Assembly: GCA_053919585.1 (NCBI GenBank)
Contig: CM132802.1
DNA: 64,000 bases
Reading direction: 5' to 3' (one strand)
DNA from: Euprymna scolopes
Lineage: Eukaryota
Shown here: one piece after another, positions 21,210 through 48,369 of the stretch
Position numbering within the stretch: position 1 is the stretch's first letter
Layout of the letters: every line of letters starts with the position of its first letter
The notes under the pieces: model-generated
What the model was told of the DNA's origin: nothing
Database searches by the model: none
Seen by the model: the letters and a program-made list of their open reading frames with translations, nothing else
Translations under genes and position numbers: made by a program

Positions 21210-22547
21210 GTATGTCTATATTAATTCTATTAATTACAAATGATTATACTCACATGAAAATTTCACAACTGTTTTTACAATATTTTCATCATTTAATAAT
21301 AATTAATAACAATATTCCTTTTGAAATAAATGCCTGTCAGGGTCTATAGTGTTAGGAAAAAATTACTCTTTTTCTTTTCTTCCACAAAAATGATTGTCAT
21401 CGTCAAGTAAATATTTTTCAGATCAATAAAACAAATGTATCTCCTATTTGCTTATTAATTTAATTAAAATTGTAGCAATTTTATTCTTTTCTTTTTAAAC
21501 AATAAATATTCTTCGTCTTCTTACCATAAAAACAATTGTCAACTAAATATTCAACAAATCATTAAAACGAATGAAACTTTTAGAAATTTATTTAAAATTG
21601 TAGTTTTACTGTATTGGCGACCACATAATTTTGGAACAGTTCGTTTAAAAAATGAGTAATGTGTTTTTTTACCTTAGAGACATTAGATTAATCATTAATT
21701 AACGTTAATCTAATATTTTAATATGTGTGAAAGGTGATAATGTACGAACGAACATAAAATGCCTCAGTAGGTTATTATATAGATTCTATTCCTCCACATT
21801 CCATAGTTCATGACCTCTGTTCAATTTGGAGAGGCAATGGATACCCTCTGTAAGGGTACCTGTATGTGTAAATATGAAGCAAAGGTGATGAAATCTCCAA
21901 CCACACCTCTCCTGCTTGATTCCAGGACGATTAGAAACATTAATGAGATAAGTGTTACAAACATGGTTATATAGATTTTATCATCATCCAGGAATAAACT
22001 TACATATAAGAGCATTTCAATTAAATATGTATGAAAGGTGATAACGTACGAACGAATATGAAATGCTTCATTATTATTTATTTGTAATTAACAAGCACTG
22101 AACTGTTATCCTCATCTTAGTAGTAATATTCACAATTTTTCGACTGGTGTGACATGTTCCTTCTTCTGGTATGCAATTGTGGTCCATTTGTGTCCACATC
22201 TGTATAATAATACACTAAGGTTCTGGTGACAACATGTCATGGAAAAAGGAATGTTTTTATTCCTGATAAGGATATATAATGTTGAAAGATTGTTGGTGTT
22301 AAAAATAAGTAGATTTAAAGTCAGCTAAGTTTCACCATTTATTTAAAAATAAAATTGCATTGTTTTCATTTAATATGCTCTAATTTTGATGATTATAAAA
22401 ATATACACCGATAAGAAACGAACATATGCATGAGTGGATGGTCAACCTCATTATGAATTCAAGATGGCCGCCATCACAATATGCAAATTTTACAATTGAT
22501 TTCGATAGTCCTATTTATATGCTACAAATATTGTCTACATTGAGTAT

Positions 22548-22938
22548 ATCAGCTACCTTGGCCTTCGGGACAAGATCAAAGTGTAGTATCTGTTCCGGCA
22601 GATGCTGCACTTAAGATAATTTGTGCCAGTCAGTGGAGGGGAAACCCTCTATACTGGGACAATTATTATTTTTGGTAACCAGAGTGCCCCCTTTTTGCCT
22701 ACTTTTAGGGGAGCTGGTTTTTACCTCACATTAAAAACGGCCTTGTGCCTAATTTGCTCAGTGGGGGAGCAAATAAATACCATCTGTTCTTCAGATGCTG
22801 CACTTCTATTTCTTGTTCTCTTTCGGTGGAGGAGAAATCCTTCACGACTGAGACAATTTTTATTTTTGTACCTTTTCTCCACGTTAAAAAACGTCCCTGG
22901 TGTCTAACTCTGTCCCGTGGGGAGGCATAGTAAATAGG
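22548..22938 (+). mobile_element. U2 snRNA-headed short retroposon, dimer (monomer A 22548-22781, 5'-truncated monomer B 22782-22938)
   Basis: Starts ATCAGCTACCTTGGCCTTCGGGACAAGATCAAAGTGTAGTATCTGTTC, like the U2 5' end; Sm-like ATTTTTGG at 22668; flanked by TACATTGAGTATA / TACATTGGGTATA (13-bp TSD, 1 mismatch). Confidence 0.75.
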
Positions 22939-23093
22939 TACATTGGGTATACAATGAAAGGTTATGGTTACAGTCATTTTAAAAACTTGGTATAAAAATG
23001 ATTTAAAAAAAAAATAGCTCTCAAGTGTTAAATAACCCGTTGCATAATGATTAATATTAACAATGTGTTATTTGTATCAATTGTTTTATTCAG

Positions 23094-40385: not shown

Positions 40386-41499
40386 GTAAGTGCATCTAAA
40401 CATGTAAATGCATCCTGCAGAAGGAAAGCTCTAGAAGATTTGTGCATCAACATGTCTAGTTCTAATGCTTCAACTCACGCGCTATAGTAGATTCATAATC
40501 TGCACCAACTTTGCTGAATTGTATTTCTATGCAATATCCTCTAATTTGATTATATTCTTTTAGCATTTGCTTTTTATATGTATTTCTTGTATAAATCTGT
40601 CTATTATTGCTAACCATCTTTTTTATTGTTGTCACTAAAATTACTAATCACTCTCAATATATAAAGTTATGTATGTGTATTTGTTTATCTAAATGAATAA
40701 ATGCAAAAGTTTCCTCCCTCTGTTCTAACTATATTAGCATCAAACCAGGTTGTACTTAATTCATTTCAAACACCTTTAACTTTTCTTAATTTGCATATTT
40801 ATTTGATAAACAGCTTCTACTAATATTCTGTAATATACATTTTAATTTGCACTATCATAGTTTCCTATATATACGCAATGTTTTTTCATTGACAATAAAG
40901 CGTCTGATGTCACTGAATGCTAAGAACAGATACTACATTTTGAGCTATTTATTTTCATAAAATCTAAAAACAGTTACATTTTAATATTTTAAATAAATTA
41001 GGCGTAAGGTCATTCAAAAGTGTGGTCAAATGGGTGTCCTTGGTCATCCTTTGTCACCATGACTAGAAAATGTCTATCCTACTCTTAGCTAGAATCATCA
41101 ACCACCATAATACCATTTACTCTAGGGGACGTCCTACTTAAAACAAATTCCCAAATGGTTCAAAAAGTTTTATTGAAAGTAAATACATCTATATACAATT
41201 ACACTTTGTTTTTATAGCTATGTATTTCACTCTGTGGTAATTCTTGTTGTTATTAATTCATTACATTATTTTAAAAATGTCATTAAAATTAAAGTTATAA
41301 ATTTAATTTTATTCAAAAAGAAAGTCAACTTCGTAATTTGAAAATAAATAAAATAGCTATTTAATTTATTAGCTTTAATTGATATAAAAAAATAATGATT
41401 CCCTAAAAACTGAATCTGAATAGACTGCACACAGCAAGCATGTCTTTCTTTTACTGGCTAAAAGCATACTTGCATAAAAATAGCATACAATTATGCATT

Positions 41500-47430: not shown

Positions 47431-48025
47431 TGATCTCAACTATTAACTCATTAGCTAAGCTTTTTTCTTTTTTTTTTTTTTTTTTTTTACTATTGGAGTC
47501 ACCATTTATTAAGGCCAAGAGCCACTTAAGGATAAGGGTTAATGAGACGGGAATAATTGCTAGTCAAAAGATGAGAATCACTATGGGAGTACTAACATTG
47601 ATTAATGGTATGAATTGCATTTAATTGTTTATGGAGTGGTCTATTATAAGAGTTTGTTAATATTGGTAAAATTGTAATCAGTAGGGAAGCAGTCTTATGG
47701 AAATGTGTTCCCCAAACGAGAAGCTTTTGGAAATTAGTTCTGTCCAGCAAAATTTGCTTAAATTTAAGCATGAAGATCTTATACACATAAAATTGGGAAT
47801 ATATGTATTATGAAGTTTTTAATTTAAGGGCTGAAACCCTTGTTTATAAAAATATGAGAGGATTTATTTGTGCTTATAAGTAATGCATCAAAATATATAA
47901 ATATATAAAAAAAAATGACTTACCAAAATGTTTAAAGATCTTATATCAACAGCCCATTCACAGAACTGATCCGGATAGAGAGGTGACTAACTGTATGTTA
48001 CAGCTGGTCTGGACAAATAAGAGTA

Positions 48026-48205
48026 CCTATTTACTATGCCTCCCCACGGGACAGAGTTAGACACCAGGGTCGTTTTTTAACGTGGAGAAAAGGTACAAAA
48101 ATAAAAATTGTCTCAGTCGTGAAGGATTTCTCCTCCACCGAAAGAGAACAAGAAATAGAAGTGCAGCATCTGAAGAACAGATACTACACTTTGATCTTAA
48201 CGTAA
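48026..48205 (-). mobile_element. U2 snRNA-headed short retroposon, B-type monomer, 5' truncated
   Basis: 156/157 identity to 22782-22938; carries TAAGATCAAAGTGTAGTATCTGTTCTT on the minus strand; perfect 13-bp TSD ACAAATAAGAGTA at 48013-48025 and 48206-48218. Confidence 0.8.
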
Positions 48206-48369
48206 ACAAATAAGAGTAGTGAACAAATTATATTATCAGTGTGATAGCTAAACTGAAAAGAACAAAAGAGGAAGTAAACTTCCAAGTCAGAACTTTTATA
48301 GTGTTAAACACGTGGCTAAATCAACCAATGAGTAACTGTTCTAATATCATGTGATCTTAGACTCCAACA

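What the first reader, a model, noticed from the sequence alone, without database searches (positions are those of the whole stretch)
22536..22951. U2 snRNA-headed, structured, recently mobile retroposon family (candidate new snRNA-derived SINE)
Seen: the element begins at a U2-like 5' end with the branch-point recognition region AAGATCAAAGTGTAGTATCTGTTC (GTGTAGTA at 22581-22588). It then diverges from canonical U2 but keeps an Sm-like ATTTTTG(G) (22668, 22862). It is flanked by a 13-bp TSD. A second insertion at 48026-48205 has its own 13-bp TSD, is 5' truncated, ends at the same TAAATAGG|TAC junction and differs from monomer B at 1 of 157 nt. Known: variable TSDs with 5' truncation mark LINE-mediated retroposition; U1/U2-derived SINEs (SINEU) are described from crocodilians; Keno and Utopia are U2-targeting LINEs. 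Inference: this is an independent invertebrate U2-derived SINE, or retrocopies of a highly divergent U2-like snRNA, with at least two subfamilies and recent activity.
Basis: partly seen in the sequence, partly recalled or inferred. Interest (0 to 1): 0.9.

Follow-up and report, generated by a model that had tools for sequence, protein, structure and literature searches.

The report
U2-headed SINE with LINE partner
The stretch is one copy of a very abundant, young family of short non-coding retroposons in a large mollusc genome; its first ~48 letters come from U2 spliceosomal RNA, and a 7-kb LINE in the same genome carries the same leader, an arrangement published so far only for crocodilians.

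Summary
Window 22549-22938 is a TSD-flanked element: a U2-like head of ~48 nt, unit A, then unit B. Window 48026-48205 (-) is a TSD-flanked head+B monomer. The two B units differ at 1 of 157 positions.

It is not the species' U2 gene. Rfam U2 gives 27 bits against a threshold of 46, while a canonical U2 elsewhere in the genome scores 162 bits. Only the head is demonstrably U2-derived; the rest is no more U2-like than shuffled sequence.

The head motif occurs 59,408 times in the 5.9-Gb genome and the B tail 29,182 times. The usual form is the ~180-nt monomer. Longer copies are head-(A/C units)n-B.

Copies have 8-19 bp TSDs, no poly(A), and insert at TAC(AAT) sites.

The same head starts a ~6.9-kb L1-superfamily LINE (APE, RT, zf-RVT). 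This LINE has thousands of copies, some intact and in tandem arrays. Its 3' end is collinear with the SINE's C-unit tail, so it is the likely partner.

No Pol III promoter, tRNA or ribozyme was found. Poly(A) RNA data show only passive, two-stranded coverage.

Verdict: a SINEU-like family in a mollusc, a new variant of a known kind. Two earlier follow-ups of this scan reached a similar reading on other DNA of this genome.

The parts
22536..22548 (+). 5' target-site duplication of the dimer (TACATTGAGTATA)
   Evidence: Matches 22939-22951 at 12 of 13 positions.
22548..22595 (+). U2 snRNA-derived head: a stem-loop I-like CTTGGCC-TTCG-GGACAAG, then AAGATC, then the branch-point recognition sequence GTGTAGTA and ATCTGTTC
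   Evidence: Aligns to positions 1-47 of the genome's own canonical U2, L033. Rfam U2 gives 26.6 bits, E 0.0024, carried by this part. This copy has one of the longest heads among the 30 dimers sampled.
22599..22612 (+). 3' strand of the head hairpin (CAGATGCTGCACTT), which pairs with AAGTGTAGTATCTG at 22579-22592
   Evidence: A 14-bp stem appears in the minimum-energy and centroid folds, z -5.2 and -4.4. It is kept in 13 aligned copies, mostly through G-U/A-U changes. Differently sequenced complementary strands occur in C units and in LINE leaders.
22596..22781 (+). Unit A, an internal unit. Its 5' half is B-like and includes the Sm-like TTATTTTTGG at 22665-22675. Its 3' half is C-like and ends GGCCTTGTGCCTAA...GCAAATAAATACC
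   Evidence: Self-alignment of A against B. The A tail is shared with C units. It is followed in register by CC+ATCTGTTC, as in 64 of 99 A/C tails.
22782..22938 (+). Unit B, the terminal unit, ending ...GGCATAGTAAATAGG with no poly(A)
   Evidence: The B tail motif occurs 29,182 times in the genome. B is the last unit in every multi-unit copy sampled whose 3' end lies inside the locus.
22939..22951 (+). 3' target-site duplication (TACATTGGGTATA)
   Evidence: It begins TAC, as do 38 of 47 B-tail flanks.
48026..48205 (-). Head+B monomer, the commonest form of the family, starting TTACGTTAAGATC...
   Evidence: In genome listings the head-to-B-tail spacing is about 149 nt. Many reads skip unit A: joint 22587>22782, 156 reads.
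48013..48025 (-). 3' TSD of the monomer (TACTCTTATTTGT read on the minus strand)
   Evidence: 13 of 13 with 48206-48218.
48206..48218 (-). 5' TSD of the monomer

Best explanation
This is a non-autonomous, LINE-dependent retroposon of the SINEU type.

Anatomy. An RNA of ~180 nt (head+B), or longer forms head-(A/C)n-B, starts with ~48 nt copied from the 5' end of U2 snRNA. These 48 nt cover stem-loop I, the helix-I region and the branch-point recognition sequence. In the element the recognition sequence is paired into a 14-bp hairpin with the following CAGATGCTGCACTT. The RNA ends in a structured tail related to the 3' end of an L1-superfamily (Tx1-like) LINE of the same genome, and that LINE carries the same leader at its own 5' end.

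Mechanism. The LINE's endonuclease and reverse transcriptase copy the SINE RNA into the genome by target-primed reverse transcription, at sites beginning TAC(AAT). This makes 8-19 bp duplications and leaves no poly(A).

Longer forms. Extra internal units arise in two ways: by in-register joining at ATCTGTTC, and by tail-to-head joining. The cause may be template switching or homing of new copies onto existing heads. Unit number also changes afterwards at the DNA level.

Shown: the anatomy, copy number, TSDs, target bias, shared head, tail similarity and thermodynamic structure.

Inferred: which LINE does the work, how the RNA is transcribed (probably Pol II or read-through, not Pol III), and what the hairpin does.
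For: **Family and mobility**
- 1,579 first-look candidates for the dimer; the 40 scored are 93-100% identical.
- 59,408 heads and 29,182 B tails genome-wide; reversed controls give 0.
- TSDs of 8-19 bp in independent copies.
- 38 of 47 B-tail flanks begin TAC, with consensus TACAAT, against a trinucleotide background of 1.3%.

**U2 origin of the head**
- It aligns to the genome's own canonical U2.
- Rfam U2 scores 26.6 and 27.1 bits.
- Older subfamilies carry the canonical GATCAAGTGTAGTA.

**Not a Pol III SINE**
- No tRNA.
- No 5S, 7SL or tRNA hit in the element.
- T5 runs lie inside the units.

**Partner LINE**
- The head is the 5' end of a ~6.9-kb element with APE, RVT_1 and zf-RVT domains.
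- At least 1,224 (5' part) and 2,498 (3' part) first-look candidates; nearly all scored copies start within the first few bases of the head.
- One copy has an intact ORF1 of 862 aa and ORF2 of 1,161 aa.
- The nearest solved relative is human L1 ORF2p at 1.6e-61, against R2 at 5e-19.
- The LINE's last 150 nt are collinear with the C unit: z 4.1, 2 of 500 shuffles reach the score.
- LINE 3' ends are likewise followed by (A)TAC....

**Structure**
- Folding z-scores are -4.4 and -5.2.

**Precedent**
- SINEU and Tx1 LINEs sharing U1/U2 heads in crocodilians (PMC4494074).
Against: - No transcript with defined ends was seen. Poly(A) and single-cell RNA data cover both strands about equally, and no start or end places were called. 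These libraries would not capture a small non-polyadenylated RNA in any case.
- The tail similarity to the LINE is moderate for C units (z 4.1) and not significant for the B unit directly (z 1.6). The LINE subfamily that drives B may therefore be a different one from those sampled.
- The LINE copies read in full sit at a specific repeated target, or in tandem arrays, whereas SINE copies are dispersed.
- Covariation support for the RNA structure is weak: the covariation term is about 0, and 2 of 39 pairs are compensatory among 13 recent copies.
- Assignment of the LINE to the Tx1 clade was not tested by phylogeny.
Confidence: 0.8

Rival explanations
1. The family is an internally deleted derivative of the U2-headed LINE (a 'mini-LINE' like Bov-A), not a SINE born from a retroposed U2 RNA. 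On this view the U2 leader was acquired once by the LINE, for example by co-transcription with or homing into U2 sequence, and the short elements inherited both ends. This concerns origin and classification only. The mobilisation mechanism is the same as in the best explanation.
For: - The head equals the LINE 5' end.
- The C-unit body is collinear with the last ~140 nt of the LINE.
- In L082, SINE units sit between a leader and a LINE body, joined in register at ATCTGTTC.
- LINE 3' ends abut U2-like or canonical U2 5' ends in several places.
Against: - Many SINE copies carry a fuller U2 5' end (ATCAGCTACCTTGGCCTTCGGGAC, GGCCTTTTGGCT) than the LINE leaders sampled, which have a different U1-like start. 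This points to separate or repeated contacts with genuine U2.
- The ~70-nt middle of units A and B has no counterpart in the LINE.
Confidence: 0.3
2. These are genes, or direct retropseudogenes, of a divergent U2-like snRNA that acts in splicing.
For: - U2-like 5' end, an Sm-like AUUUUUG between stem-loops, and an overall length near that of U2 (~195 nt).
- Strong predicted structure.
Against: - Below the Rfam threshold: 27 bits against 46.
- The body is no more U2-like than shuffled sequence, z -0.1.
- The branch-point recognition sequence is sequestered in a 14-bp hairpin.
- Tens of thousands of dispersed, TSD-flanked copies lack a shared upstream promoter.
- C units lack the Sm-like motif.
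- A normal U2 exists in the genome.
Confidence: 0.03
3. The repeats spread mainly at the DNA level, as a satellite or through segmental duplication, and the TSD-like repeats are incidental.
For: - Tandem arrays of units exist: L015, L047, L055, L057.
- Four copies of one host repeat carry head-B, head-C-B or head-C-C-B at the same site, so unit number does change in place.
Against: - Independent dispersed copies have different flanks and clean TSDs of variable length.
- The 3' end is sharp and the target-site bias is strong.
- The window copies lie in unrelated unique intron sequence.
Confidence: 0.05
4. The head is not derived from U2. It is a hairpin-forming leader that resembles U2 by chance or convergence.
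For: Only ~48 nt are similar, and Rfam scores are sub-threshold.
Against: - The similarity covers three consecutive U2 features in the right order and spacing: stem-loop I with a tetraloop, AAGATC, and GTGTAGTATCTGTTCTT.
- Variant heads carry GGCCTTTTGGCT, identical to the genome's U2.
- Older subfamilies have the canonical GATCAAGTG.
- LINE 3' ends abut a full canonical U2 in L038.
- There is a published precedent (PMC4494074).
Confidence: 0.04

Closest known systems
SINEU (SINEU-1/-2/-3) of crocodilians and their Tx1-Mar partner LINEs (Kojima 2015, PMC4494074)
   Same: - A short non-autonomous retroposon whose 5' head is a piece of U2 (or U1) snRNA.
- No recognisable Pol III promoter, and oligo-T runs inside.
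- Multi-part and dimeric subfamilies built by repeated 5' additions.
- An L1/Tx1-type LINE in the same genome carrying the same snRNA-derived head.
- The LINE shows target-site specificity.
   Different: - No poly(A) tail: it ends ...TAAATAGG at TAC sites.
- The tail is related to the LINE 3' end; none was found for SINEU-1.
- Variable numbers of ~190-210-nt internal units.
- The U2 recognition sequence is locked in a hairpin.
- Far higher copy number and very recent activity.
- The host is a mollusc, not a reptile.
- Dispersed insertion, rather than into one DNA transposon.
Keno (Tx1 group) and Utopia, the U2 snRNA gene-targeting LINEs
   Same: - A LINE physically associated with U2 sequence.
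- Here the LINE starts with U2 nt ~22-52.
- Some LINE 3' ends abut U2 or U2-like 5' ends.
   Different: - The window elements are short, non-coding and complete.
- The LINE copies read in full are not inside U2 genes. They lie in another repeated target or in LINE tandem arrays.
- Utopia has a restriction-like endonuclease, whereas this LINE has an APE-type one.
- Clade membership was not tested.
Ceph-SINEs and other cephalopod SINEs (tRNA-headed; Akasaki 2010, cited in PMC4758252 and PMC5786205)
   Same: Short LINE-dependent retroposons of cephalopod molluscs with LINE-derived tails.
   Different: Those have tRNA-derived Pol III heads and a Ceph/CORE central domain. Here there is no tRNA and the head is U2-derived.
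SVA-type composite retroposons of hominids (knowledge; mentioned in PMC4494074)
   Same: - A non-autonomous, probably Pol II-transcribed composite element.
- An internal block of variable unit number, flanked by fixed 5' and 3' modules.
   Different: Unrelated sequences; SVA has poly(A) and is L1-driven, with a VNTR of 35-50 bp units.

Membership tests
SINEU (snRNA-headed SINE, Kojima 2015) | Short (<~500 bp) non-coding retroposon in many dispersed copies with TSDs | tested here: met
   - Forms of 180 and 392 bp.
- 59,408 heads and 29,182 B tails.
- TSDs of 8-19 bp.
SINEU (snRNA-headed SINE, Kojima 2015) | 5' head derived from U1 or U2 snRNA | tested here: met
   About 48 nt align to the genome's own U2. 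Rfam U2 is the only family hit, at 26.6/27.1 bits, sub-threshold.
SINEU (snRNA-headed SINE, Kojima 2015) | 3' poly(A) tail (all described SINEU groups have one) | tested here: not met
   Copies end ...GTAAATAGG directly at the TSD.
SINEU (snRNA-headed SINE, Kojima 2015) | Tx1-group LINE in the same genome sharing the snRNA head and target preference | tested here: inconclusive
   - A LINE with the same head was found; it has APE, RT and zf-RVT and is closest to L1 ORF2p.
- LINE and SINE share the TAC start of flanks.
- Tx1 clade placement by phylogeny was not done.
U2 spliceosomal RNA gene (Rfam RF00004) | Reaches the family's gathering score with stem-loops IIa, IIb, III and IV | tested here: not met
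   - No hit at gathering threshold in the window.
- 26.6/27.1 bits against 46.
- The genome's real U2 scores 161.7.
- Post-head similarity has z -0.1.
tRNA-, 5S- or 7SL-headed SINE (SINE2, SINE3, SINE1) | Head derived from a Pol III gene with an internal promoter | tested here: not met
   ARAGORN finds no tRNA. No tRNA, 5S or 7SL hit at E up to 10 in the element. T5 runs lie inside the units.
5' end of a long U2-targeting LINE (Keno/Utopia) | The stretch continues into LINE coding sequence | tested here: not met
   Both window copies are bounded by TSDs at 392 and 180 bp. The same head does start a 6.9-kb LINE elsewhere.
Retrozyme or ribozyme-bearing tandem repeat | Self-cleaving ribozyme in each unit | tested here: not met
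   No ribozyme family at E up to 0.1 in four multi-unit loci, nor at E up to 10 in the window element apart from a weak RAGATH-13 match at E 3.9.

The most novel reading that the evidence does not exclude
The U2-derived hairpin leader is a functional module, not a fossil. By mimicking the 5' domain of a spliceosomal snRNA it may give the RNAs of both LINE and SINE something they need. Candidates are snRNA-type Pol II transcription and 3' processing, cap hypermethylation with nuclear re-import, or recognition by the LINE proteins. It may also serve as the landing site that makes units and LINEs pile up head-to-tail. Its separate presence in L1/Tx1-type LINE-SINE pairs of crocodilians and of a mollusc would then reflect a general and possibly ancient alliance between this LINE group and spliceosomal snRNAs.
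Probability: 0.25. Interest if true: 0.8.

Novelty: new variant of a known kind. Interest (0 to 1): 0.6.

Why it matters
snRNA-headed SINEs are the rarest SINE class. In the literature searched here they are described only from crocodilians, as old and inactive families (PMC4494074).

This case is young and very abundant, with at least 59,000 heads. It sits in a mollusc together with apparently intact copies of a LINE that bears the same leader. That makes several open questions about SINEU testable:
- how such elements are transcribed without a Pol III promoter;
- why L1/Tx1-type LINEs acquire snRNA leaders;
- how multi-unit elements grow.

It also bears on annotation. Decapodiform cephalopods are reported as SINE-poor (PMC8967140). 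A family with no tRNA head would be left unclassified by standard pipelines. At roughly 15 Mb, though, this family would still be well under 1% of the genome.

Antisense copies in introns carry a near-perfect complement of the U2 branch-point recognition sequence. That could matter for splicing of host genes; this is inference and was not tested.

Tried and rejected
- **Ordinary U2 gene:** rejected.
- **tRNA or other Pol III head:** rejected.
- **Ribozyme or retrozyme origin of the tandem units:** no ribozyme found.
- **U2 origin of the whole body (Sm site, stem-loops IIb/III):** local alignment of the post-head parts gives z -0.1 against dinucleotide shuffles. The Rfam alignment across these parts adds little beyond the head.
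- **A 'promoter-like' 5' extension (TGACGT, CCGGAAGT, TGAGTCA) upstream of four copies:** this is the flank of a larger host repeat with a Helitron-like ORF downstream, not part of the SINE.
- **The poly(A)-like run in the LINE as its 3' end:** rejected. It is internal, and the element runs ~390 nt further to ...CTAAATA.
- **Direct BLAST of the dimer against the first LINE copy:** found only the head. The tail relation appeared only with the true LINE 3' end.
- **Expression:** the single read-laying run used poly(A) and single-cell libraries. It shows two-stranded passive coverage and no defined ends, so it neither supports nor excludes a dedicated transcript.
- **Rfam family search of the whole genome:** failed twice for technical reasons and was replaced by a pattern search.
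- **Names for LINE relatives:** none given by the protein database.
- **U1 by Rfam in the LINE leader:** not detected. The U1 likeness rests on a 14-nt identity recalled from knowledge and may partly be target-derived.
Full report
**1. The observation**

At 22548-22595 the + strand carries a 48-nt stretch that lines up with the 5' end of U2 snRNA. It holds a stem-loop I-like CTTGGCC-TTCG-GGACAAG, then AAGATC, then GTGTAGTA (22581-22588) and ATCTGTTC.

The element runs to ...GTAAATAGG at 22938. It is flanked by TACATTGAGTATA and TACATTGGGTATA (12 of 13).

A second element at 48026-48205 on the minus strand has perfect 13-bp duplications. Its last 157 nt differ from 22782-22938 at one position, 22894. 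At that position essentially all public reads carry the other base, so the T is private to this copy.

The dimer consists of two homologous units, A (22596-22781) and B (22782-22938). Both begin at ATCTGTTC, and A has an extra stem-loop.

**2. It is not the U2 gene**

No Rfam family reaches its threshold in the window. In permissive mode U2 is the only meaningful hit, at 26.6 and 27.1 bits against a threshold of 46.

A pattern search of the window's own genome found canonical U2 copies, the best at 161.7 bits (L033). The genome has 5.9 Gb in 925 contigs.

Aligned to that U2, the element matches only over the first ~47-52 positions. Beyond the head, a local alignment of U2 against unit B scores no better than dinucleotide shuffles (z -0.1).

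The Sm-like AUUUUUG is present in A and B. It is absent from the related C units, so it is not a family-wide feature.

ARAGORN finds no tRNA, and the units contain T5 runs. A Pol III SINE head is therefore excluded.

**3. A very large, young family**

- The 392-bp dimer has 1,579 first-look candidates. All 40 scored are 93-100% identical.
- Whole-genome pattern counts give 59,408 heads with at most 1 mismatch and 29,182 B tails. Reversed-pattern controls give 0.
- Head-to-tail spacing in those listings is mostly about 149 nt, so the commonest form is the ~180-nt head+B monomer, like the second window copy.
- Public reads agree: 156 reads join 22587 to 22782 and skip unit A.
- Fourteen monomers with distinct flanks are a median 3.2% from their consensus, with a minimum of 0.6%.
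- Runs filed under at least five organism labels hold 60-100% of the monomer's sampled 31-mers. Some runs are labelled 'mollusc metagenome'.
- The genome size and at least 46 large sequences suggest a decapodiform cephalopod. This is inference.

**4. Retroposition signature**

Independent copies have TSDs of 8-19 bp and variable 5' ends. There is no poly(A).

Of 47 distinct B-tail ends, 38 are followed by TAC, and the consensus is TACAAT. In clear cases TAC, or in older copies CAC or AAC, is also present in the 5' copy of the duplication. It is therefore target sequence or primer-template microhomology, not element sequence.

**5. Architecture**

An unbiased sample of 30 head-bearing loci and the dimer-derived loci show the scheme head-(A or C units)n-B.

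- n runs from 0 to more than 8, and B is always the last unit.
- Of 99 A/C-type tails, 64 are followed in register by CC+ATCTGTTC, i.e. the next unit without a head.
- Another 15 are followed by a few bases and then a nearly full U2-like head.
- Four copies of one larger host repeat share flanks on both sides and have a Helitron-like ORF downstream. They carry head-B, head-C-B or head-C-C-B at the same site. Unit number therefore also changes after insertion.
- No ribozyme is present in the arrays.

The same head is also joined to other bodies, including one ending in poly(A).

**6. The LINE**

One sampled head (L049) is followed by a long ORF. Extending the locus revealed APE endonuclease, RVT_1 and zf-RVT domains.

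The family has at least 1,224 and 2,498 first-look candidates for its 5' and 3' parts. Nearly all scored copies start within the first few bases of the head.

Five further loci were read. They showed the following.

- **Intact copy.** One copy has an ORF1 of 862 aa and an ORF2 of 1,161 aa. Its closest solved relative is human L1 ORF2p at 1.6e-61, against 5e-19 for R2.
- **Tandem arrays.** Arrays with a 7,458-bp period lie on contig C46. A 62%-identical relative in another assembly shows a comparable array.
- **True 5' end.** The element starts ~30-45 nt upstream of the U2-like motif with ATACTT(A/C)CCTGG. In one subfamily this equals the first 14 nt of U1 snRNA (the U1 sequence is from knowledge, and Rfam did not call it).
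- **True 3' end.** The element ends ...GGCCTTTGTGCCTAAGC...CTAAATA, about 390 nt beyond an internal A-run.

The last 150 nt of the LINE are collinear with the SINE C unit, through the blocks CTAGCTAAGGACTAGAAAAGACC, TTTTCCCC..CCCC, GGCCTTTGTGCCTAA and GCTAAATA. The score has z 4.1, and 2 of 500 shuffles reach it. Units A and B share that tail by descent, although B against the LINE directly is not significant (z 1.6).

Three full copies (L081-L083) are followed by the same repeated sequence, and further LINE 3' ends listed end the same way. In L082, where both junctions are readable, a 16-bp duplication flanks the composite insertion of leader, SINE units and LINE body.

A genome-wide listing of what follows LINE 3' ends shows:
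- (A/C)ATACTT in about 20 of 25 copies of one subfamily;
- the fixed ...AACCTAGCTTGCTAGTC in another subfamily;
- several cases where a U2-like 5' end (ATCAGCTTGG..., ATTTGGCCTTCGGGAC) follows directly.

In L038 a full canonical U2 (129 bits) follows the LINE end directly.

Thus the LINE and the SINE share a leader, a tail type and a TAC start of the downstream flank. This LINE family, or a close subfamily, is the best candidate partner.

**7. RNA structure and expression**

The monomer and unit A fold far better than shuffles, with z -4.4 and -5.2.

The dominant feature is a 14-bp hairpin. In it the U2 branch-point recognition sequence AAGUGUAGUAUCUG pairs with CAGAUGCUGCACUU. C units and LINE leaders have differently sequenced complementary strands.

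Across 13 B copies the structure is kept mostly by one-sided G-U/A-U changes. The covariation term is about 0, and only 2 of 39 pairs show double changes. Selection on structure is therefore plausible but not shown.

Poly(A) and single-cell RNA runs contain the family at high summed depth on both strands about equally, and no start or end places were called. This is what embedded copies in pre-mRNAs would give, and these libraries would miss a small non-polyadenylated RNA.

**8. Comparison with what is known**

Kojima (2015, PMC4494074) defined SINEU as follows:
- crocodilian SINEs with U1/U2-derived heads;
- no Pol III promoter, and oligo-T runs inside;
- poly(A) tails;
- recurrent 5' additions of snRNA pieces;
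- Tx1-Mar LINEs, some of which carry the same heads.

The present family matches that design point for point except for four things: the tail (no poly(A), LINE-related, TAC sites), the variable internal units, its youth and abundance, and the host phylum.

Full-text searches found no report of snRNA-headed SINEs in molluscs or cephalopods. One paper describes decapodiform cephalopods as SINE-poor and lists L1-Tx1 among coleoid LINEs (PMC8967140). Repbase and Dfam could not be searched.

Two earlier follow-ups of this scan, on other DNA of the same genome, reached a similar reading: a U2-headed SINE with a U2-homing, Keno-type LINE partner. I confirmed the shared leader independently. For 'homing into U2' I found partial support: LINE ends abutting U2 or U2-like 5' ends, and in-register joins at ATCTGTTC. 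The full-length copies I read, however, lie in another repeated target or in LINE arrays.

**9. Verdict**

It is best filed as a new variant of the SINEU kind, with an identified candidate partner LINE.

Still open: the transcription mechanism, the role of the hairpin leader, whether the short elements descend from the LINE or from retroposed U2, and whether multi-unit growth comes from homing or from template switching.

Noticed in passing
L080 (G000:C46:193138500-193148499); also C46 150-215 Mb, C3:168.45 Mb, C20:53.05 Mb, C31:12.50 Mb: Full-length copies of the U2-headed LINE stand in head-to-tail tandem arrays. The periods are about 7.46 kb, 7.16 kb and 4.28 kb. Each LINE 3' end (...CTAAATAT) is followed after one base by the next leader (ATACTTACCTGG...). 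One array copy has an intact ORF1 (862 aa) and ORF2 (1,161 aa). A 62%-identical relative in another public assembly is arrayed in the same way.
   Followed up: partly
L038:1364-1676: The LINE 3' end (...GGCTAAATATC) is directly followed by a full-length canonical U2 sequence (129 bits). That U2's downstream flank resembles the flank of the best U2 copy (L033). This is either a LINE insertion exactly at a U2 gene's first base or a template-switch product.
   Followed up: partly
L043, L065, L066, L068 (four loci on C25 and C1): These are four copies of a larger repeat with a Helitron-like N-terminal ORF downstream (MPPKRSRNESEEER...). A cluster of CRE, ETS and AP-1-like sites lies just upstream of an embedded SINE. 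The embedded SINE is head-B, head-C-B or head-C-C-B in different copies.
   Followed up: partly
window 40890-40950 (-): An isolated ~32-nt U2-head fragment (CAAAATGTAGTATCTGTTCTTAGCATTCAGTGA). It matches another U2-headed family (L031/L041 type, TTAGCAT after the head), not the A/B/C family.
   Followed up: partly
L046:1738-1854 (+): A 5S rRNA-like sequence (Rfam 66.6 bits, threshold 38) lies next to a multi-unit SINE. It could be a 5S gene or a 5S-derived repeat.
   Followed up: no
L035:~1440-1560: Two U2-like heads lie in inverted, head-to-head orientation around a GGCCTTCAGGCC centre. Each continues into an older A-type body.
   Followed up: no
The SINE dimer lies in the intron about 150 nt upstream of its acceptor, in the sense orientation.
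   Followed up: no
L033, L038, L039, L032 (canonical U2 copies): The genome's canonical U2 copies read GAUCGCGUGUAGUA where most animals have GAUCAAGUGUAGUA. The retroposon heads have GATCAAAG (young) or GATCAAG (older).
   Followed up: no
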